From NCBI GenBank assembly GCA_964019335.1, contig OZ025717.1:62001-126000 (forward strand): DNA of 64,000 bases, given 5' to 3'. The position numbers and the translations under genes were made by a program. The DNA is from Diplonema japonicum. Lineage: Eukaryota > Protista > Euglenozoa: Diplonemea. Positions 17,827 through 36,163 of this stretch are shown here, one piece after another (position 1 is the first letter of the stretch; each line of letters begins with the position of its first letter). Under the pieces are notes generated by a model that did not search any database, had not been told where the DNA came from, and saw nothing but the letters and a program-made list of their open reading frames with translations.

Positions 17827-20091
17827 TCAGGCACTGATGCGGCTCTCGCGGAGCTTGTGGGCGGCGGCGACCATGTTCTTGAGGGAGGGGATGACCTCGT
17901 CCCACTTCCTGGTCTTCAGGCCGCAGTCGGGGTTCACCCAGGTCCTGGAAGGGGGAAGGAGGAGAAGGAGGCCTTGGAGGCGGGCCGCCATGTCGTCCAT
18001 AGTGGGGACCACCGGGGAGTGGATGTCGTAGACCCCTGCGCCAAGGTCGCGGGCATAGCCATAGGAGGAGAGGGCTGCCACCATCTCCCCTGCGCTCCTG
18101 GAGTTCTCAATGGTGAGGACGTCGGCATCCATCCCGTCGATCCTCCCGATGATGTCCTCGAAGGTGGAGTAGCACATGTGCGTCACCACCTGCGTCGAGG
18201 GGCGCGCCCCGCAGGTCGACAGCCTGAAACACGCCACCGCCCACTCCAGGTACTTCTCGCTCTCCTCCTTCTTCAGCGGCATCCTCTCCCGAAGGGCCGC
18301 CTCGTCCACCTGCACCACCCTGCACCCTGCCGCTTCCAGGTCCGCCACCTCCTCCCTCACAGCGAGCGCCACCTCCACTGCCTGCTCCGCACGCGGCACG
18401 TCCACCCTGCAGAATGACCAGTTCAGGATCGTCACGGGGCCCGTCAGCATCCCCTTCACGGGCACCGCCCCGCTCGCCTTCTGGCACACAGCGAACTCCC
18501 GCACCGTCATTGCCGCCCCTCCCTTCCGAACCACCGCCCCGTGGATCACAGGGGGACGCACATACCGAGACCCGTACGACTGCACCCACCCGTGCCTCGT
18601 CAGCAGCATCCCATCCAGCTTCTGCGCGAAATACTCCACCATGTCGCTCCTCTCAGCCTCCCCGTGCACGAACACGTCCAGCCCGATCTCCTTCTGGATC
18701 CCCACCACCCTCTCGATCTCCTTGTCGATCTGCTCCTCGTACGCAGCCTTCCCCACCTTCCCCTCCTTCCACTCCCGTCGCAGCTTTCGGATCTCTGCCG
18801 TCTGAGGGAACGACCCGATCGTCGTCGTCGGGAAGTCCGGAAGCTCCGCCAGCTGCTTCCCCCTGCGCTCCTTGAAGGGCTCGCTACGGGTGTACATCTC
18901 GGGGGTTACCCCCTTCGCTCCCTCCACTCCGCTGAGGTTGTCCTCCCCGATCCATGTTGCGGCAGTAGAAGAGGAATCGGATGAGGCGAGCTTCGTCAGA
19001 ACCTCGAGCTTCTGCTTCGCGAACGCAAGCTTCGCCCTCACCTCCGCAGGGATGCTCCCCTCCTCCTCATGGTCCAGGTCGTAGGGAACGAACTGCAGGG
19101 AGCAGGAGGGAGCAACCACCACCCTCGCGTCGTCCTGCACCGCCTTCCGGATCCTCTGCAGGATGCCCCCCGCCGCGGCCTCATTCCTCCACACGTTGCG
19201 CCCGTCGACCACCCCGGCACCGAGCTCCTTCGTCGCGGGGAAGCCCTTCTCCTCCACAATCTCCACCATCGCCTTGCTCCTGCAGAAGTCGAGCGTCACG
19301 CGCTTCACGGGGAGCTCCACCACGTAGCTGTAGACAGCAGGGCTCAGGGAGTCGAAGTGCACGCACAGGTTCACAGCAGGCCCGCCGCACCCGCCGAGCT
19401 CCTTGTAAGCGGCCGTTGTAAGGGAGCGCACCTCCTCCGTCTCCGCGTCGCTCATCACCAGCCACGGCTCGTGCAGCTGCACCTCCTTCACCCCCGCCCT
19501 GCTCAGCTCCCCCAGCAGCTCCTTGTACAAGGGCACCAGATCCTTCACCAGAGCCGCAGCCGTCCTCCCTTCCGCGTACTTGCAGAGCTTTCCGAGGGTC
19601 ACAGGCCCCAGCACGATCGGGACCACCGCATCCGCCTTCGCCGCCTTGCTGCGGAGGAGCTGCACGTGCGCCAAAAAGGGAGCGAAGTTCCCGCGGGGGA
19701 CCGTGTCCGCCACCACCTCGGGCACCATGTAGTGGTAGTTCGAGTCGAAGTACTTTGTCATGTCCAGCGCGGGGATCCCGTCCCGGCCCCTCGCCTGCGT
19801 GAAGTAGGCGTCCAGCCCACCCAACCCCGCCTCCCTCACCCTCTTGCAGGTCAGCCCGAAGCGCTCGCTCCAGTCAAGCACGTGGTCGTACAGCGTGTGG
19901 TCCCCGACCCCGATCAGGCCCACCCCCGCAGCCTCCTGGTCCTGCAGGCTCTGCAGCGCCACCTTGTCGCTCACCTCCAGCAGCTCCGACTCTGTGATCT
20001 TCTTCCCCCAGTACTTCTCAAGTGCCATCTTCATCTCGCGCTTCGGTCCCGTGCGGGGGAAGCCAACAGTGGTCGTCCTCAGGTGCACCAT
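17827..20091 (-). CDS. metE: Cobalamin-independent methionine synthase
   Basis: GFPR N-terminus, MTKYFDSNYHY, TTTIGSFPQT, VHGEAER.DMVEYF, WVQSYGSR, and Zn ligands THMCYS and PDCGLKTR; 754 aa. Confidence 0.97.
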   Translation of the reverse strand: MVHLRTTTVGFPRTGPKREMKMALEKYWGKKITESELLEVSDKVALQSLQDQEAAGVGLIGVGDHTLYDHVLDWSERFGLTCKRVREAGLGGLDAYFTQARGRDGIPALDMTKYFDSNYHYMVPEVVADTVPRGNFAPFLAHVQLLRSKAAKADAVVPIVLGPVTLGKLCKYAEGRTAAALVKDLVPLYKELLGELSRAGVKEVQLHEPWLVMSDAETEEVRSLTTAAYKELGGCGGPAVNLCVHFDSLSPAVYSYVVELPVKRVTLDFCRSKAMVEIVEEKGFPATKELGAGVVDGRNVWRNEAAAGGILQRIRKAVQDDARVVVAPSCSLQFVPYDLDHEEEGSIPAEVRAKLAFAKQKLEVLTKLASSDSSSTAATWIGEDNLSGVEGAKGVTPEMYTRSEPFKERRGKQLAELPDFPTTTIGSFPQTAEIRKLRREWKEGKVGKAAYEEQIDKEIERVVGIQKEIGLDVFVHGEAERSDMVEYFAQKLDGMLLTRHGWVQSYGSRYVRPPVIHGAVVRKGGAAMTVREFAVCQKASGAVPVKGMLTGPVTILNWSFCRVDVPRAEQAVEVALAVREEVADLEAAGCRVVQVDEAALRERMPLKKEESEKYLEWAVACFRLSTCGARPSTQVVTHMCYSTFEDIIGRIDGMDADVLTIENSRSAGEMVAALSSYGYARDLGAGVYDIHSPVVPTMDDMAARLQGLLLLLPPSRTWVNPDCGLKTRKWDEVIPSLKNMVAAAHKLRESRISA

Positions 20092-30309: not shown

Positions 30310-30721
30310 CCCCTCATGGAGGGCCGCCCTTGGGTGGGTTGGGGGGGGGCTATCTATTTATACTCCCCTTCTGGAGCATTGCGTTCCAATCGAGGCCTTG
30401 AGCGTCTTGCGGAGTCGTGTGATGCGGTCTCGCTTGTAAGCGGCTTTCAGTTCCATCAGCTTGTCGTGCGTGGAGTGGGTGGCGAAGATGGGCCTCCTGG
30501 CGAAACCCATAGCCGTCTTCCCACCTATTGCGATGAGGGACTTCACTCTCTTCTGTTCATCCGCTGGGAAGGGGCGTGGCTTCTTCCGTGCCCTGCATGC
30601 CGCGTTCAGCTTTCTTATCAGTGCTTTGATCTTGCGAGCCCTATCTTCCAGCAGACCTCCCAGTAACTTGCCTGTCGTCCATTCGAAGTCGATGGCCAAT
30701 TCCACCGCTGACACTTCAGAG
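30310..30721 (-). mobile_element. Retroelement C-terminal relic with an intact 118-codon frame
   Basis: VSAVELAIDFEWTTG and VKSLIAIGG..GFARRPIF match the motifs at 15484-16270; DNA-level match to 52893-52915. Confidence 0.6.
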
Positions 30722-30749: not shown

Positions 30750-33746
30750 CTACATCTCCTCACTAAACGCCGACACAACTAGCGACGCATCTGGCGTAGT
30801 CATCGAGAAGCCAAGACTCCTGTATTCAGGTTCTGTAGCAGTGGTGGCAGACAGAGGCATGCCACCGTGATCGCCTTGCAGCCTAGCCGCAATGTGAATA
30901 ACACACAGCTTGGGGAGGGAACGGAAAACGGGGACAAGTGTGCCCCATTTGAGCCCGGCTATCCCTGTCAACGGAGACTCAGGGGCTTTTTGTAAAACTG
31001 TTGACTGCTGGCGCTGAATTTCGAGAAGCACCGTAATCAGCATCACATCGTCAAGCAACTTCGAATCAACACACAAACAAAGCAAGGAAGCTACGTAATT
31101 TGCAGGCATCCCTTGGTGCCCGTACGAGATAACATGCTTCCGAACAGTTTGAAGAGAGGAAATCCACTCCCGTTTCAGAGACCCTTCCGCTTCCGTAGCT
31201 ACGGTGGTTGCTGATTTTAACGATGTTCTCCTGTGCAAGCCTCCTCCTGAAGGAGCGCCTTCGTCCTCGTATTCCACGAGCTCCGCATTTCTCAAAGTTG
31301 CGAAATGCCTTTCAAGAAGCTCTTCAGGCAGAACCTGCAAGCATGACAATGGGTTCGCAATACCCTTAAACCTGTACTCCCCCAAGTACCTCACATCCAC
31401 CACGTGCTGTAGATCGTCTAAGTACGGTTCGACAGCTTTGTACATGGGCTCTGTGACGAGGACCTGCCCACCGCATCCCGAGTCGGACACCCTGGCACAT
31501 TCGTTAACGATCCCACCTTCGTAGTCGTAGCCGCCTTGCGGGGTTGGTTTTACTATAGGTGTACCAGTGTGGATGCCCATTCGGACGCGGAGGCCTTTGA
31601 ACCCCGGTTCTACCAAACAAGCTTGGTGTTTCAGGATATCCTCAGGCCACTCTGCCTTCAGCAGCTGCAGCTGCGCGTCGCATGTGAACTCGACTGCGTT
31701 CTGCGGCGACGCGAAGGCGATCATGAAGGAGTCGCCGATGGTCTTCACCTCGTAGCCCTCGTGCTTCGCGATCAGCTCCCTGCACAACCGGTGGTGCATC
31801 TCCAGCGCCACGGCCATGGAGTCAGGAAGCGTTCCCCACAATGCCGACGACTGCAAAATGTCCGTGAACACGATAGTCACCTCACCTCCCTTAGGGGCGA
31901 ACCGTGTGAGGCGTTCCCTCGCGTTCTTCAGATGCATCCAATACAAGTACACAGCAGCCAAGACAAACAAGATAAACCCACCCACCAACGGCAGAATAAC
32001 AGGGATGTAATCAGCAGGTGGAGACGAGACCGGTTCCGGCACGCAAGGGCTGTCCCCAGGGATGGGGTGGTAATACCCGAAGTAGCACGGTGTGCAGGCT
32101 TCCCACGAAGGGACGAATTTCGCATGCAGGCCGCAGTCTTCGGCGACCTTCGCTAGCTTAAGAGGCGGGTTTGATGTGTTAAAGTCAAGAACGACGACTC
32201 CGTGGACGGCGGGTGTGTACGGAGATAGATCCTTTAACCGTTTCGCTAGCAGCGACCATGAGTCGACCCCGTTGGTGTCCGGCACCGTGCCTGGCATGGG
32301 GGTCAGGTCGTACTCGTCACCACCGTCGCAGATGAACTTGTTGGTGACTATCCTGTACTGTCGAAAAGGGTCGATGTCCTCCCAACCTGTTCTGTTCGCG
32401 TCGGGGGTCTGCATGGACGTGATGCGGTTGCCCGCCGGTCTTGACGGGTTGAACACAATCCGTAAGCCTTTCATTTGCATGAACTGTCCAGAGATGGTAG
32501 CATTCGGATCGAAGCCCCCTTCCGCAGTCACCGCCGACACAGAGTGCTCCAAAGCCCGCCACAACCTCGCCGCCGTCATGTTGACATGGCACAGGTTGTT
32601 GGGGTATGGGAAGGCAGCTTCGAGATGCGAGGTTCGGACTTCCCCAGCGTCCCATCCCGTGCGCAGGCTCCCACCGTTACACAGAGCGATGTCCGCATTC
32701 TGAGAGGAGATCATGGCATCGGTGATAAGCGTTCCTAAGTGGCACTCTTCGTGCCTGCAGGAATCGTACTTCGTGTTGTTTGGGTACTTGATGTGGCCAT
32801 GGGGCATCGCCGTGGTGCACAACCCCACTATGCTGTCCTTCGCAGCTGCTTCGTCGACCAGCTTCTGAATGAAGTCCAGGTCTTCCTCGTGACCTGCATC
32901 TATGAAGCTATTGGGCAGCGTAGTCGGCAGGTACTGGCGCACGTCTCGGGCACCGGTCATCTTCCCGGTGTTGTCGAATTCGAGAACAAAGGAATCCATA
33001 CTGTACCTCCCGTTCTTCAGTGGCACGAAACGCATGGTGTTGTTGACGAAGGGCTCAGGCGGCTCTGCGTTGGCAGAGTCGATGTACGCGACGGCATCGA
33101 TACCCGTCTGCTGAAGCTGCAAGAAGTCTTCATCAGACCAGGTTTGCACAGCAACGGCGACTACTGCTGTCACCTTGTGAATGGTACGGAGAAAAGTGTT
33201 CAGGTCCGTGACTTGCGGGTGCAAAGGACGCGTCTCGGCATAAAACTCATCAGGGGATAATGCCAAGACTGCGATACGGACCCCTGGAAGGGGCTCCACG
33301 ATCTTATAGGTAGAAAAGAGGTTGAGAAATATAGGATTACTCGCAACGACATTAGTGAGGAGCAAGGTAAGGTTGCTTTGCTGGATGTAGGCGGCATCCT
33401 CAATGGAGGAGTGCCAGGAGAGGAAGTATGGGGAGCGGATCTGCACCATGTCTGCTGCAGCACGTGTCCACATCATGTCGTTGATGGACAGGCGTGCGGG
33501 GTGGCGCTGGATGAGCCCCGAGATCTGCGTGAAGTCCGCAATTTTGAGGTCAGCATCCACCCCCTCACTCCCGTGTCGGAACACAGCGTTTATGAAGGGG
33601 AACCCTCCCACGCAGTCCGCCTTCGACACGTTTGAACACGGCGACCCCCACTTCGTTGTGAAGGGCTGCAGCGACTGCGTCGTCATCATCGTCACACGCA
33701 CAGACACCGACGCCACGCTTCCCAGCACGGTCAGCACCGCTAGCAT
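30750..33746 (-). CDS. Receptor-type adenylate cyclase with a 5'-nucleotidase-like ectodomain
   Basis: Signal peptide; 5'-nucleotidase C-terminal motifs (ECHLGTLITDAM, ADIALCNGGSLR, FPYPNNL, LEHSV, GQFMQMKGL); one TM helix; class III cyclase motifs (TIVFTDI, YEVKTIGDSFM, RVRMGIHTG, VNECARV). Confidence 0.92.
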   Translation of the reverse strand: MLAVLTVLGSVASVSVRVTMMTTQSLQPFTTKWGSPCSNVSKADCVGGFPFINAVFRHGSEGVDADLKIADFTQISGLIQRHPARLSINDMMWTRAAADMVQIRSPYFLSWHSSIEDAAYIQQSNLTLLLTNVVASNPIFLNLFSTYKIVEPLPGVRIAVLALSPDEFYAETRPLHPQVTDLNTFLRTIHKVTAVVAVAVQTWSDEDFLQLQQTGIDAVAYIDSANAEPPEPFVNNTMRFVPLKNGRYSMDSFVLEFDNTGKMTGARDVRQYLPTTLPNSFIDAGHEEDLDFIQKLVDEAAAKDSIVGLCTTAMPHGHIKYPNNTKYDSCRHEECHLGTLITDAMISSQNADIALCNGGSLRTGWDAGEVRTSHLEAAFPYPNNLCHVNMTAARLWRALEHSVSAVTAEGGFDPNATISGQFMQMKGLRIVFNPSRPAGNRITSMQTPDANRTGWEDIDPFRQYRIVTNKFICDGGDEYDLTPMPGTVPDTNGVDSWSLLAKRLKDLSPYTPAVHGVVVLDFNTSNPPLKLAKVAEDCGLHAKFVPSWEACTPCYFGYYHPIPGDSPCVPEPVSSPPADYIPVILPLVGGFILFVLAAVYLYWMHLKNARERLTRFAPKGGEVTIVFTDILQSSALWGTLPDSMAVALEMHHRLCRELIAKHEGYEVKTIGDSFMIAFASPQNAVEFTCDAQLQLLKAEWPEDILKHQACLVEPGFKGLRVRMGIHTGTPIVKPTPQGGYDYEGGIVNECARVSDSGCGGQVLVTEPMYKAVEPYLDDLQHVVDVRYLGEYRFKGIANPLSCLQVLPEELLERHFATLRNAELVEYEDEGAPSGGGLHRRTSLKSATTVATEAEGSLKREWISSLQTVRKHVISYGHQGMPANYVASLLCLCVDSKLLDDVMLITVLLEIQRQQSTVLQKAPESPLTGIAGLKWGTLVPVFRSLPKLCVIHIAARLQGDHGGMPLSATTATEPEYRSLGFSMTTPDASLVVSAFSEEM

Positions 33747-33894
33747 CTCAAAGGGGCTGACCACTTCCCCCGAACCCTTACCCAACTGTCGGTGTGAGAT
33801 TACTTTAAAACAAGAAGACAACCAAGATAACTTTATACTAATACATCTATGAAACCGAGGGGGGGGGGGAGCAGGGAGGACTCGCAATCCTTTT

Positions 33895-34950
33895 CTACGC
33901 ATCGTTCATTGTCTCCTTCTTTCCCGTCTTCTTCTTTTTCTTGTACCCGATAGGGACAGTCTCCTTTCTCAGGTAGTACAAACACAACAGCATTGCTGAG
34001 GCGACGAAGGAACATCCTGCACCCACCCAAGACAAATAGAAGGAGGCCCCATACACACAGGAACCAGATCGCGACGTAGGGGTAGAGGAGTAGGGACGGG
34101 AGCGGAGCCAGGTCCACGAAAGGAGCTCGCACATGTCATAGGAGCAATAGGAGGTGGTGAAGAGGAACATAGAGAGCGCCGGCGACACAATTCCACAAGC
34201 TGTAGAGAGGCCGCTCAGCACTAAGATAACAAGGGAAGCAGTCTTAGTGGGGTGTCCCTTGGAGGCTCCGAAGCTCACTAAGCACACGCCGATGATGGTG
34301 CCCGTCAACAGCACGATACTCAGAATGTACAGGACGCCGCTGCCCACCATAAGGCTGTCTGCTTCATCGGTGTTGCACCTTTCAGAGAAGAAACTAACCT
34401 TCCCGCACTCCTCAGGCTCGTTTGTAGTAGTGTTGCACATGCGCAGCACACCGTACGTCAGCTCAGTGACTTCGAATGTTGCATTACCATCCACTACCTC
34501 CGCTTCACGCTGCAGTTTCACGTTGAACCACTCCTGCAGCACCCCTGCCGCGAGGTATAGCACGAATACCACACTGCATACCCCCAGCACGGTCAGCAGC
34601 ACTGGTCTGCTCTGTACACCCATGCACGTCACCTTCGGCATCTCCACGTCATCCTTGCCATGCTGTTTACTGTGCTCATGTTCGTCGTGTTTTGCTTTCC
34701 CCTGCTCGGTGCCAGGGAATGCCGCCACCAGCGGGTTCTCTGGCGACCTATCGGCCTCCCGTTCCTCGTCGCTCCCCACTGTCGTTGCCATGTCCACGTC
34801 CACAACCTGCGGCTTGTTGTACAGTGTCATGAACTCATGCCGCACACCTGTCACAAGGCATATCTCCAGCTGCATGGACTCGCCGCACTCTCCACAGTAA
34901 GGTCCTCCTGCATAGCCTCTGGGGGTGCCATCTTGCTCAGGGTGTTCCAT
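33895..34950 (-). CDS. Four-TM amastin/claudin-like membrane protein with an N-terminal Cys/His motif
   Basis: Four hydrophobic helices, GVLRMC loop motif, YGASFYLSWVG; N-terminal CGECG..CLVTGVRH. Confidence 0.7.
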   Translation of the reverse strand: MEHPEQDGTPRGYAGGPYCGECGESMQLEICLVTGVRHEFMTLYNKPQVVDVDMATTVGSDEEREADRSPENPLVAAFPGTEQGKAKHDEHEHSKQHGKDDVEMPKVTCMGVQSRPVLLTVLGVCSVVFVLYLAAGVLQEWFNVKLQREAEVVDGNATFEVTELTYGVLRMCNTTTNEPEECGKVSFFSERCNTDEADSLMVGSGVLYILSIVLLTGTIIGVCLVSFGASKGHPTKTASLVILVLSGLSTACGIVSPALSMFLFTTSYCSYDMCELLSWTWLRSRPYSSTPTSRSGSCVYGASFYLSWVGAGCSFVASAMLLCLYYLRKETVPIGYKKKKKTGKKETMNDA

Positions 34951-35029
34951 GCCCTGCAGCTTCCTGTGTGGGATGGACGGAAAGTGGAATGCAATACAAG
35001 TGTACAAGGTAAGTACAATGTAGGGACAT

Positions 35030-36163
35030 CTAAGGTTTGAAGACAAGCGCTTTGTCGATGTCGAGGTCGCGCTTCGAGGTATCGCCCGGGCGGCAACGCT
35101 CCCAGCGGGGGCTGTTCTTGTAGGGGTGCGCGAGGTCGTGGAAGGCCTTCTCGGAGGTGTCGTTGGGTGCAACGAGCTGTGCAAGGATTTCTTGCCGTTC
35201 GACGTTGTCAGGCGTTGCGGTGGAGATGAGTCTGTGCCCAGGGTCGAGCCACGACTGCACACGGTGGCGCTCTGTGATCTCTTCCACCACCTTGCGGGCG
35301 ATTCTTCTCGCACCGTCGGATGCCCAATGCCCGTGGGGGAGCTGGTCTTCCTGCAGCTGTTTAGGCTTCACCACCTCCGTCTTCTTGAAAAGCACAGCGT
35401 CAGCTTCATGACGGGTTCTATTAATTTCCATTTGAGAGGGCGGTCGGAAAGGCTCTGCTTTATTAATACAGGGATTGCTCATTTCTTCCCAACCCTCGAG
35501 GAGCTGGACGCCTTCCCCCTCACCGGGAGCTGTTAACTGGCTTAGGATCTCGTGCTTACAGATGGTGTCCGCAGAGCTCGTGTTGCGTTGTGACTCGTAC
35601 TCCGCAGCACGTTTGGAGGCAAGGGACCTGGATCCTTTTTGAGACCATTCCGATAGCTTTGCGGTGCGCTCCTCGTCAGGTAGTTTTGGGTAGTCTGTCC
35701 GAATCTGTGCTTCTTCTTTCTTTATTTTCTTCTCCTCGTTCAGGATGGCCGCGTCCAGCCGTTTCAGCATGCTCCCTTCGTACAGCCGCTTGAGCATCTC
35801 TTCTTGCTTTTTTTTCGTCATTTTCTTTTCTGCAGGAGGTGGCGTCGGTGGTGCTGTTGGCTTTTTCTCGCTGTCGTCGGTCCGCCGTTTCGTGTTTTTA
35901 AACAGCCGCTCGGACAACTGTTTTTGCTTTTTCCAGTCTTGCTTCTGCCTGGCCTCCATCTTCCGAACCTGCTCGGTTTCGGTTTTTTCCCTTTCCAGGT
36001 TTCTTCTCTTGTGGCCGTCTTCGTGTAACTTCTTCAGGCGGTCCTTCTTGGGCCCTCTCTCCAATCTCTCGAGAAAATCAACTACATCGTCCACACCACC
36101 TGAACACGCCGGGGAGAAAGCTGACCCGTCTGCTGCAAGCTGCCAGAGGTCTGTGCTTGGCAT
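35030..36163 (-). CDS. Hypothetical charged/coiled-coil protein
   Basis: 377-aa ORF co-oriented with its neighbours; internal repeat EILSQLTAP / EILAQLVAP. Confidence 0.75.
   Translation of the reverse strand: MPSTDLWQLAADGSAFSPACSGGVDDVVDFLERLERGPKKDRLKKLHEDGHKRRNLEREKTETEQVRKMEARQKQDWKKQKQLSERLFKNTKRRTDDSEKKPTAPPTPPPAEKKMTKKKQEEMLKRLYEGSMLKRLDAAILNEEKKIKKEEAQIRTDYPKLPDEERTAKLSEWSQKGSRSLASKRAAEYESQRNTSSADTICKHEILSQLTAPGEGEGVQLLEGWEEMSNPCINKAEPFRPPSQMEINRTRHEADAVLFKKTEVVKPKQLQEDQLPHGHWASDGARRIARKVVEEITERHRVQSWLDPGHRLISTATPDNVERQEILAQLVAPNDTSEKAFHDLAHPYKNSPRWERCRPGDTSKRDLDIDKALVFKP

What the first reader, a model, noticed from the sequence alone, without database searches (positions are those of the whole stretch)
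30750..33746. Receptor adenylate cyclase with an apparently dead 5'-nucleotidase ectodomain: candidate extracellular nucleotide/nucleoside sensor
Seen: signal peptide, a ~550-aa ectodomain, a Cys-rich linker, one TM helix (~31940-32005) and an intact class III cyclase domain (~31300-31890). The cyclase keeps both metal-binding Asp (FTDI, GDS), the ATP-selecting Lys (EVKT) and NxxxR. The distal ectodomain (~32170-32830) carries CD73/UshA 5'-nucleotidase substrate-binding-domain motifs. The proximal part sits where the metallophosphatase domain belongs but shows no DxH, GD, GNHE or GHxH ligands (remnants KIADF, DMVQIRSPY, LLLTNV). Known: trypanosomatid receptor cyclases (ESAG4/GRESAG4) use Venus-flytrap ectodomains, and 5'-nucleotidases undergo a large hinge rotation on substrate binding. 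Inference: an enzyme has been repurposed as a ligand clamp linking external AMP/ATP/adenosine, such as prey or lysis cues, directly to cAMP. This would be purinergic signalling without a GPCR.
Basis: partly seen in the sequence, partly recalled or inferred. Interest (0 to 1): 0.85.

Follow-up and report, generated by a model that had tools for sequence, protein, structure and literature searches.

The report
Receptor cyclase with dead 5'-nucleotidase sensor
A marine protist (Diplonema japonicum) gene encodes a membrane receptor whose outer part is a 5'-nucleotidase that has lost its catalytic metal site but kept its AMP-binding pocket, wired to an intact cAMP-making enzyme inside the cell, so it is probably a direct sensor of external nucleotides.

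Summary
Window 30750-33746 (minus strand) is one intronless 998-aa gene. In order it encodes a signal peptide, a two-domain 5'-nucleotidase-fold ectodomain, a Cys-rich stalk, one TM helix, a GRESAG4-like class III adenylate cyclase and a tail.

- **Fold:** the AlphaFold model (pLDDT 93) matches CD73 and Thermus 5'-NT over both domains (Foldseek E 1e-27 to 1e-29; Z 26-27).
- **Dead catalytic site:** in 36 full-length relatives every dimetal and catalytic position is lost.
- **Binding pocket kept:** the residues that hold AMP on the CD73 C-domain are retained (83-97% against a median of 33%). In this gene they are R383, N409, R414, Y433, F523 and D529.
- **Cyclase:** all six catalytic residues are intact.
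- **Distribution:** the family spans diplonemids, prokinetoplastids and euglenids. The same dead ectodomain is also fused to protein kinases, ART domains and class C 7TM bundles, and all of these form one clade apart from canonical enzymes.
- **Paralogues:** sister cyclases in this genome carry solute-binding-protein ectodomains instead.

Ligand binding and signalling remain inferred. I found no paper describing the cyclase fusion. A 2025 preprint lists 5_nucleotid_C on choanoflagellate GPCRs. First-stage notes of this scan flagged paralogues elsewhere in this genome.

The parts
30750..33746 (-). Complete CDS (998 aa from M53, stop at 30750-30752) of the receptor adenylate cyclase
   Evidence: Single ORF. 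The start codon is argued from upstream gene's stop, the polyPy/AG tract and the conserved leader. A 99% identical Trinity transcript from Diplonema japonicum exists.
33847..33880 (-). Polypyrimidine tract (33851-33880) plus AG (33847-33848): likely trans-splice acceptor / 5' UTR start
   Evidence: Read directly from the sequence. The function is inferred from what is known of euglenozoan mRNA processing and was not shown by reads.
33705..33746 (-). Signal peptide (aa 53-66, MLAVLTVLGSVASV)
   Evidence: Hydropathy peak. Homologous hydrophobic leaders sit directly before beta-strand 1 in family members.
32898..33704 (-). Ectodomain N-domain (aa 67-335): metallophosphatase fold with all dimetal and catalytic ligands replaced; keeps the CD73-like Cys-x7-Cys-x-GG loop (C89/C97)
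   Evidence: Collinear alignment with canonical 5'-NTs. The N-half alone matches CpdB/YfkN phosphoesterase domains at Z about 17.5. No Metallophos hit.
32841..32897 (-). Long inter-domain linker helix (aa 336-354), the hinge region of 5'-nucleotidases
   Evidence: Helix H264-282 of the model. Whole-chain superposition on CD73.
32178..32840 (-). Ectodomain C-domain (aa 355-575): 5_nucleotid_C substrate-binding domain with an intact nucleotide pocket (R383, N409, G411, R414, Y433, F523, D529; disulfide loop C382-C387)
   Evidence: Pfam E 1e-32. Residue-level alignment to CD73 and 2z1a. Residue roles from PMC8677862. Family conservation.
32010..32177 (-). Cys-rich stalk (aa 576-631; C590, C603, C606, C620, each 97% conserved) between the sensor and the membrane
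   Evidence: This part lies outside the 5'-NT fold in the model. The equivalent region scores as Ephrin_rec_like in relatives.
31938..32009 (-). Single transmembrane helix (aa 632-655)
   Evidence: Kyte-Doolittle maximum of 2.67. A TM helix sits at the same place in about all family members.
31326..31901 (-). Class III adenylate cyclase catalytic domain (aa 668-859) with D681, D724, K720, D793, N800, R804
   Evidence: Pfam PF00211 E 5e-22. GRESAG4.1/4.3 E 1e-30. The six residues are invariant in 27 cyclase-bearing relatives, with one exception at R804.
30753..31325 (-). C-terminal cytoplasmic tail (aa 860-1050), no known domain; conserved only in close relatives
   Evidence: No Pfam hit. phmmer 'TAIL' matches only in P0001-3, P0031 and P0033.

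Best explanation
The gene encodes a type I membrane receptor of Diplonema japonicum.

Shown by the analysis:
- The extracellular part is a homologue of CD73/UshA-type 5'-nucleotidases and keeps the whole two-domain, hinged fold.
- It has lost every ligand of the dimetal centre and the catalytic Asn-His/Asp, so it cannot hydrolyse nucleotides.
- It retains the preformed nucleotide pocket of the C-terminal domain: an aromatic clamp for the base, Asn/Asp for the ribose and two Arg for the phosphate.
- A conserved Cys-rich stalk and one TM helix connect it to a fully equipped, ATP-specific class III cyclase domain. Such domains are active only as dimers.

Inferred mechanism:
- An extracellular nucleoside 5'-monophosphate-like ligand (AMP or a related nucleotide or nucleoside) binds the C-domain pocket.
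- Binding and/or closure of the N-domain over it changes the geometry of an ectodomain dimer. This change passes through the stalk and TM helices to the pairing of the two cyclase domains and so changes cAMP synthesis.
- The dead enzyme thus plays the role that Venus-flytrap/PBP domains play in trypanosomatid receptor cyclases and class C GPCRs.
For: - Architecture and topology. All 8 N-glycosylation sequons and the conserved Cys pairs lie in the ectodomain, and there are none in the 395 cytoplasmic residues.
- Fold: AF2 pLDDT 93.1, pTM 0.87. Foldseek E 2e-29 (2z1a) and about 1e-27 (CD73) over 540-558 columns. VIA Z 27.4 and 26.4.
- Dead site: motifs I, III, IV and V are replaced in the query and in all 36 family members. 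Canonical 5'-NTs, including this genome's own (C50, C84, C5), keep them and score as Metallophos.
- Pocket kept: R 30/36, N 33/36, G 35/36, R 30/36, aromatic 35/36 and 34/36, D 32/36, against a median column conservation of 33%. The roles of these residues in AMP binding to open CD73 via the C-domain alone come from PMC8677862.
- Cyclase competent: six catalytic residues invariant.
- Sensor-module behaviour: the same ectodomain clade (SH-aLRT 100 against canonical enzymes) is fused to cyclases, Pkinase, ART and 7tm_3. The nearest cyclase paralogues carry SBP_bac ectodomains.
- Expression: Trinity transcript P0001, 99% identical.
Against: - There is no experimental or docking evidence of ligand binding, hinge motion, dimerisation or ligand-regulated cAMP output.
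- In CD73 high-affinity binding and closure also use the metal site and N-domain residues that are missing here, so affinity for AMP may be low or the ligand may differ.
- CD73's clamp also accepts caffeine, flavin and pyrimidines, so base specificity cannot be predicted.
- The closed-like pose of the AF2 model may be a modelling bias.
- The sequencing runs laid on the locus behaved as DNA, so transcription rests on one transcriptome assembly.
- The tree is a quick LG+G4 search with limited sampling of canonical enzymes.
Confidence: 0.6

Rival explanations
1. It is the same receptor architecture, but the retained pocket binds a different small molecule. Candidates are NAD or dinucleotides, UDP-sugars, 2',3'-cyclic or 3'-nucleotides, flavins, or another phosphorylated aromatic metabolite rather than AMP or adenosine.
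For: The 5'-NT superfamily includes UshA (UDP-sugars), NadN (NAD) and CpdB, all matched structurally. CD73's clamp binds riboflavin and caffeine. The family has its own invariant motif next to the second Arg (NGGxxRxGWxAG, with W417 100% conserved) that canonical enzymes lack. The 7TM relatives have changed the first Arg, the Asn and the Asp, which shows that the pocket can be retuned.
Against: In the cyclase subfamily all six AMP-contacting positions of CD73 are kept together, including both phosphate-binding Arg and the ribose-binding Asp. That combination is most simply explained by a ribonucleoside monophosphate moiety.
Confidence: 0.2
2. The ectodomain has no small-molecule ligand. It acts as a constitutive dimerisation scaffold or as an adhesion / protein-binding domain, and the cyclase is regulated otherwise (for example by membrane stress, as proposed for trypanosome cyclases).
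For: CD73 dimerises through its C-domain (established structural knowledge; not tested here). No ligand is known for any kinetoplastid receptor cyclase (PMC7719234). Some family members have degenerate pockets (P0056, P0066, P0115).
Against: Pocket residues rank among the most conserved columns together with structural Cys, Gly and Pro, although the catalytic residues a few angstroms away in canonical enzymes were freely replaced. The same module was recruited repeatedly in front of different outputs, as expected of a sensor.
Confidence: 0.12
3. The ectodomain is still an ecto-enzyme using a non-canonical active site, so the protein is a bifunctional nucleotidase/cyclase.
For: Only the general fold and an intact substrate pocket.
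Against: All seven metal ligands and the catalytic His/Asp dyad are replaced by non-ligating residues (T/S/Q, S, P, Y, V, D/E, A/P) in the query. There is no conserved replacement set across the family.
Confidence: 0.03
4. It is a non-functional relic (a pseudogene or an expansion by-product).
For: It belongs to a large expanded cyclase family with at least 47 copies in this genome.
Against: The 998-codon frame is intact and transcribed. There is a 56% identical orthologue in D. ambulator and relatives across three euglenozoan classes, with invariant catalytic and pocket residues.
Confidence: 0.02

Closest known systems
Trypanosomatid receptor-type adenylate cyclases (ESAG4/GRESAG4; PDB 1fx2, 1fx4)
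   Same: Type I topology with a large ectodomain, one TM helix and a single class III catalytic domain that must dimerise. It is the best sequence match for the cyclase domain (E 1e-30), all catalytic residues are shared, and it likewise belongs to an expanded gene family.
   Different: The ectodomain is not a periplasmic-binding-protein / Venus-flytrap type but a catalytically dead 5'-nucleotidase followed by a Cys-rich stalk. The PBP-type (SBP_bac_1/8) version exists as a paralogue in the same genome.
Ecto-5'-nucleotidase CD73 / bacterial UshA and Thermus 5'-NT (PDB 4h2i, 1ush, 2z1a)
   Same: The same two-domain hinged fold (Z 26-27). Both disulfide loops align with the CD73 Cys pairs I recall as C51-C57 and C353-C358. 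The C-domain AMP pocket residues are identical or conservatively replaced. The membrane-proximal C-terminus matches the GPI attachment end of CD73.
   Different: There is no dimetal centre and no catalytic Asn-His/Asp. It is anchored by a TM helix and continues into a cyclase. It carries the family-specific motif NGGxxRxGWxAG. It is a homologue, not a functional member of the enzyme family.
Class C (Glutamate-family) GPCRs with 5_nucleotid_C and Ephrin_rec_like ectodomains in choanoflagellates and relatives (bioRxiv 10.1101/2025.04.15.649019)
   Same: The same kind of Metallophos-less 5'-NT ectodomain plus a Cys-rich stalk in front of the membrane. Metagenomic 7tm_3 proteins fall in the same clade as the euglenozoan receptors.
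   Different: The output there is a 7TM bundle, not a cyclase. Their pocket has drifted (first Arg, Asn and Asp are variable). As far as my term search of it showed, the preprint records only the domain annotation, not the dead metal site or the retained clamp.
Class C GPCR and natriuretic-peptide receptor guanylyl cyclases with Venus-flytrap (ANF_receptor) sensors
   Same: The logic is the same: a bilobed hinged binding domain (plus a Cys-rich stalk in class C GPCRs) controls a dimeric output across the membrane.
   Different: The sensor fold is unrelated. Here an enzyme fold has been repurposed as a pseudoenzyme.

Membership tests
Class III adenylate cyclase (Pfam PF00211), receptor type | Catalytic domain scoring above the Pfam gathering threshold | tested here: met
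   78.8 bits against a cut-off of 21.9. GRESAG4.1/4.3 E 1e-30.
Class III adenylate cyclase (Pfam PF00211), receptor type | Two metal-binding Asp, an adenine-selecting Lys/Asp pair, and transition-state Asn and Arg, all in one chain (homodimeric type) | tested here: met
   D681, D724, K720, D793, N800 and R804 are present and invariant among relatives. The residue roles come from established class III cyclase knowledge.
Class III adenylate cyclase (Pfam PF00211), receptor type | Signal peptide, ectodomain, single TM helix, then the cytoplasmic catalytic domain | tested here: met
Class III adenylate cyclase (Pfam PF00211), receptor type | cAMP synthesis activity | not testable with these tools
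   Needs an enzyme assay.
Trypanosomatid RAC (ESAG4/GRESAG4) subfamily | Periplasmic-binding-protein-like ectodomain | tested here: not met
   The ectodomain has the 5'-nucleotidase fold. The PBP/SBP type is found only in paralogues L003 and L004.
5'-nucleotidase / UshA / CD73 enzyme family | Two-domain fold: N-terminal metallophosphatase domain, linker helix, C-terminal substrate-binding domain | tested here: met
   Foldseek E 1e-27 to 1e-29. VIA Z 26-27 over about 465 residues.
5'-nucleotidase / UshA / CD73 enzyme family | Dimetal centre ligands (motifs DxH, GD, GNH(E), H, GHxH/N) | tested here: not met
   In two alignments no ligand column of the query shows a canonical residue, except that one alignment places an Asp/Glu at the first motif V column. 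By eye D123 of KIADF could fall at motif II. There is no Metallophos hit, while canonical paralogues of the same genome do hit.
5'-nucleotidase / UshA / CD73 enzyme family | Catalytic His (GNHE) with its partner Asp | tested here: not met
   The His position is Pro in the query and in 22/36 family members. The Asp position is Leu.
5'-nucleotidase / UshA / CD73 enzyme family | C-domain nucleotide pocket (CD73 R354, N390, R395, F417, F500, D506) | tested here: met
   R383, N409, R414, Y433, F523 and D529. Roles from PMC8677862.
5'-nucleotidase / UshA / CD73 enzyme family | Nucleotide phosphohydrolase activity | not testable with these tools
   Predicted absent. Needs an assay.
Receptor-type pseudo-5'-nucleotidase ectodomain clade (defined here) | Groups with the Metallophos-less receptor ectodomains and apart from canonical 5'-NTs | tested here: met
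   The 63 receptor ectodomains split from the 13 canonical enzymes at SH-aLRT 100. The query sits in a starred diplonemid cyclase subclade.

The most novel reading that the evidence does not exclude
The dead 5'-nucleotidase ectodomain is an old, widely distributed eukaryotic sensor module. It would be a functional analogue of the Venus flytrap that binds extracellular nucleotides without hydrolysing them and drives at least four output types (adenylate cyclase, protein kinase, ART and class C 7TM). That would make it a previously unrecognised superfamily of purinergic receptors. This gene would be a direct AMP/nucleotide-to-cAMP transducer, giving the first predicted ligand class for a euglenozoan receptor cyclase.
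Probability: 0.35. Interest if true: 0.85.

Novelty: new variant of a known kind. Interest (0 to 1): 0.72.

Why it matters
No ligand is known for any kinetoplastid or euglenozoan receptor adenylate cyclase, despite decades of work (PMC7719234 states this). Here the sensor is a homologue of one of the best-characterised nucleotide-binding folds, with the AMP-contacting residues intact and the catalytic machinery removed. That gives a concrete, cheaply testable ligand hypothesis and a set of point mutants.

It is also a clean case of an enzyme turned into a receptor (a pseudoenzyme). The hinge of the enzyme may have been co-opted for signalling. The same module is shared with receptor kinases and class C GPCR-type receptors in other protists, which links the choanoflagellate GPCR annotation to a mechanistic idea.

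Diplonemids are among the most abundant marine heterotrophic protists. Sensing dissolved nucleotides (from lysis, prey or detritus) through cAMP could matter for their foraging behaviour.

Tried and rejected
- **RNA evidence:** the runs that hold the locus behaved as genomic DNA (flat depth, contigs crossing intergenic DNA). They gave no transcript ends or SL junction.
- **The look-up of encoding contigs:** Their taxonomy stays unknown.
- **Word-indexed homology search:** it found only three full-length relatives. The exhaustive HMMER search was needed to see the family.
- **First tree run:** the run with the mixture model did not finish in time. I used LG+G4 quick instead.
- **M1 (33902) as start:** rejected because it overlaps the upstream gene's last codons and precedes the polyPy/AG tract. 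M73, where the Trinity ORF starts, is also rejected because it would delete the conserved leader and beta-strand 1.
- **Pseudogene or residual enzyme:** both considered and rejected (see rivals).
- **Literature:** searches for the cyclase fusion found nothing.
Full report
**1. What is there**

Window 30750-33902 (minus strand) is one uninterrupted 1050-codon frame. The real start is M53 at 33746.
- The upstream minus-strand gene (33895-35313) ends with TAG at 33895-33897.
- A 30-nt polypyrimidine tract and an AG follow (33847-33880). The next ATG opens a 2-codon mini-ORF. The ATG at 33746 begins a hydrophobic leader (MLAVLTVLGSVASV) that relatives also have directly before beta-strand 1.

I use ORF numbering below; subtract 52 for numbering from M53.

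The parts in order are as follows.

| Part | Residues (ORF numbering) |
|---|---|
| Signal peptide | 53-66 |
| N-domain | 67-335 |
| Linker helix | 336-354 |
| C-domain | 355-575 |
| Cys-rich stalk | 576-631 |
| TM helix | 632-655 |
| Cyclase domain | 668-859 |
| Tail | 860-1050 |

All eight N-x-S/T sequons and the conserved Cys pairs are in the ectodomain and none is in the cytoplasmic part. This fits a type I surface protein.

**2. Source and expression**

The best database match (99% identity) is a Trinity transcript of Diplonema japonicum in EukProt. A 56% identical orthologue comes from D. ambulator. The assembly has 62.5 Mb in 132 contigs and at least 47 cyclase paralogues. The public runs that hold the locus behaved like genomic DNA and say nothing about transcription. 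Expression therefore rests on the transcriptome entry.

**3. The cyclase**

Pfam PF00211 scores 78.8 bits. The closest solved structures by sequence are T. brucei GRESAG4.1/4.3, E 1e-30. The six residues that define an active, ATP-specific homodimeric class III cyclase are all present: D681 and D724 (metals), K720 and D793 (adenine), N800 and R804 (transition state). They are invariant in 27 cyclase-bearing relatives, with one exception at R804.

**4. The ectodomain is a 5'-nucleotidase by descent and by fold**

- Pfam finds 5_nucleotid_C (E 1e-32) but no Metallophos.
- An exhaustive HMMER search with the ectodomain found 4213 relatives. About 45 cluster representatives of roughly 1000 aa cover the entire ectodomain. 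One canonical 545-aa 5'-NT (P0175) aligns over residues 11-497, which includes the N-domain.
- An AlphaFold2 model built on a 49-sequence alignment has mean pLDDT 93.1 and pTM 0.87.
- Foldseek matches Thermus 5'-NT (E 2e-29) and human CD73 (about 1e-27) over 540-558 columns.
- VIA-align gives Z 27.4 and 26.4 with about 465 aligned residues. The N-half alone matches the CpdB/YfkN metallophosphatase domains at Z about 17.5.
- The model superposes better on closed than on open CD73 (rmsd about 5.0 Å against 8.7-10.8 Å). I do not treat this as evidence of a state.
- Model residues 504-558, the stalk, lie outside the 5'-NT fold.

**5. Dead catalytic site, live binding pocket**

I tabulated the catalytic and substrate-binding columns in alignments with canonical enzymes.

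| Position (canonical residue) | Query residue (two alignments) |
|---|---|
| Motif I Asp / His | gap or S / T or Q |
| Motif II Asp | T (by eye D123 of KIADF could align here) |
| Motif III Asn / His / Glu | S / P / Y |
| Partner Asp | L, or a gap |
| Motif IV His | V |
| Motif V His / His-or-Asn | D or E / A or P |

- Across 36 full-length family members none of motifs I, III, IV or V survives. The catalytic His is Pro in 22 of 36.
- Canonical sequences keep every one of these residues.
- The same genome encodes canonical paralogues (C50:464119, C84:403435, C5:50908, and C50:483438 with EF-hands) that Pfam does recognise as Metallophos + 5_nucleotid_C. The missing hit in the receptor is therefore real divergence.

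The C-domain tells the opposite story. According to the structure of AMP bound to open CD73 (PMC8677862), the site is preformed on the C-domain alone. The base stacks between Phe417 and Phe500, the ribose is held by Asn390 and Asp506, and the phosphate by Arg354 and Arg395. The residue-level alignment maps these onto the query.

| CD73 residue | Role | Query residue |
|---|---|---|
| Arg354 | phosphate | R383 (inside the conserved C382-x4-C387 disulfide loop) |
| Asn390 | ribose | N409 |
| Arg395 | phosphate | R414 |
| Phe417 | base clamp | Y433 |
| Phe500 | base clamp | F523 |
| Asp506 | ribose | D529 |

- Within the family these columns are conserved at 83-97% (aromatic 34-35 of 36). The median column is 33% and the 90th percentile is 73%.
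- The remaining top-conserved columns are mostly Cys, Gly and Pro, plus a family-specific invariant Trp in NGGxxRxGWxAG (W417).
- Selection has therefore kept the binding half of the enzyme and discarded the chemistry.

**6. Family and modularity**

- Named members come from diplonemids (Diplonema, Rhynchopus, Lacrimia, Hemistasia, Flectonema, Artemidia, Namystynia), prokinetoplastids (Papus, Apiculatamorpha) and euglenids (Rhabdomonas, Entosiphon).
- In this genome Pfam 5_nucleotid_C hits 13 loci. At least six lack Metallophos and look like receptors (C70, C37, two on C47, two on C80).
- The same dead ectodomain precedes other outputs. These are protein kinase domains (Artemidia P0055, Namystynia P0072), ART domains (P0054, P0056), unidentified 400-aa cytoplasmic parts, and class C 7tm_3 bundles in about 25 metagenomic cluster representatives.
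- The 7TM group also lacks the metal ligands. It keeps the aromatic clamp and the second Arg, but varies the first Arg, the Asn and the Asp.
- In a quick ML tree of 76 ectodomains, all 63 receptor-type sequences are separated from all 13 canonical enzymes by a branch with SH-aLRT 100. The 7TM clade nests among cyclase types. This fits one ancient loss of catalysis followed by shuffling of output domains. The tree is unrooted in effect and canonical sampling is thin.
- The nearest relatives of this gene's TM-cyclase-tail portion (about 40% identity) carry bacterial solute-binding-protein ectodomains. The pseudo-nucleotidase therefore occupies the slot of a Venus-flytrap-type sensor on the same chassis.

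**7. Mechanism**

Shown: the topology, the fold, the loss of the catalytic site, the retention of the pocket, a competent cyclase, and modular reuse of the ectodomain.

Inferred: an extracellular nucleoside-monophosphate-like ligand binds the C-domain. Binding or N-domain closure re-arranges an ectodomain dimer (CD73 dimerises through the membrane-proximal C-domain, from established knowledge). The Cys-rich stalk and TM helices pass this on to cyclase dimerisation and cAMP output.

Base specificity cannot be predicted. Affinity may differ from CD73, because the closed-state contacts from the metal site are gone.

**8. Comparison with what is known**

- It works like a trypanosomatid receptor cyclase or a class C GPCR, but with a different sensor fold.
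- It is a member of the class III cyclases.
- It is a homologue of the 5'-nucleotidases but not a functional member, because the defining metal site was tested and not met.
- Full-text searches found no description of a 5'-nucleotidase-cyclase fusion or of a dead 5'-NT receptor in Euglenozoa.
- A 2025 preprint lists 5_nucleotid_C and Ephrin_rec_like domains on choanoflagellate Glutamate-family GPCRs. My term search of it turned up only the domain annotation.
- The claim 'purinergic signalling without a GPCR' needs tempering. P2X channels and plant P2K1 already qualify (my own knowledge). What would be new is a direct nucleotide-to-cAMP receptor and a pseudoenzyme sensor superfamily.
- First-stage notes of this scan flagged paralogues on other contigs of this genome with the same reading. 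They are unchecked and are not independent evidence.

**9. Verdict**

The finding is a new variant of a known kind (a receptor cyclase with a novel pseudoenzyme sensor). I put interest at about 0.7, because it turns the long-open ligand question for euglenozoan receptor cyclases into a direct bench test.

Noticed in passing
window 30400-30720: Directly 3' of the gene lies a very high-copy repeat. Contig word depth in the genomic runs is roughly 20- to 700-fold that of the gene body, with many short contigs and loose ends.
   Followed up: no
window 33895-35313 (minus): The upstream neighbour is a 472-aa ORF with several hydrophobic helices and a Ser/Thr/Pro-rich N-terminus. Only about 150 nt separate its stop from the receptor's start, as in polycistronic euglenozoan gene arrays.
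   Followed up: no
L005:1294-4110 (G000:C47) and L013:1223-4267 (G000:C80): These paralogues have the same dead 5'-NT ectodomain and TM helix, but their cytoplasmic part scores only marginally as a cyclase (Pfam E 0.056 and 2e-4) and is not found by a family cyclase HMM. They may be 'double pseudoenzyme' receptors. An earlier first-stage note says the same.
   Followed up: partly
P0055, P0072 (kinase); P0054, P0056 (ART); diplonemids Artemidia and Namystynia: The same ectodomain plus TM helix is fused to long cytoplasmic regions that end in a protein kinase domain or an NAD:arginine ADP-ribosyltransferase domain.
   Followed up: partly
P0090-P0172 (about 25 metagenomic cluster representatives, e.g. 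P0094, P0121, P0129): These are class C GPCR-type proteins (7tm_3) whose ectodomain is the same Metallophos-less 5'-NT. The metal ligands are lost, the aromatic clamp and second Arg are kept, and the first Arg, Asn and Asp are variable.
   Followed up: partly
L016 (G000:C50:464119), L018 (C84:403435), L023 (C5:50908), L025 (C50:483438): Canonical Metallophos + 5_nucleotid_C paralogues in the same genome have 170-220-aa N-terminal extensions and no obvious signal peptide. One begins MGCGAS, which looks like an acylation motif, and one carries EF-hands. These look like intracellular or Ca-regulated 5'-NT-family enzymes, which is unusual for this family.
   Followed up: no
L003:1429-4140 (G000:C52) and L004:1-2691 (G000:C82): These receptor cyclases have bacterial solute-binding-protein (SBP_bac_1/8) ectodomains. 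They are the closest paralogues of this gene's TM-cyclase-tail portion.
   Followed up: partly
window 32643-32678 (aa 409-420): The family-specific motif NGGxxRxGWxAG has W417, G416 and G420 100% conserved in the receptor family and absent from canonical 5'-NTs. It may be a replacement contact at the pocket rim.
   Followed up: no
window 18001-20000: There is a local GC spike (0.655, GC skew -0.23) against a background of 0.35-0.56 in the window.
   Followed up: no
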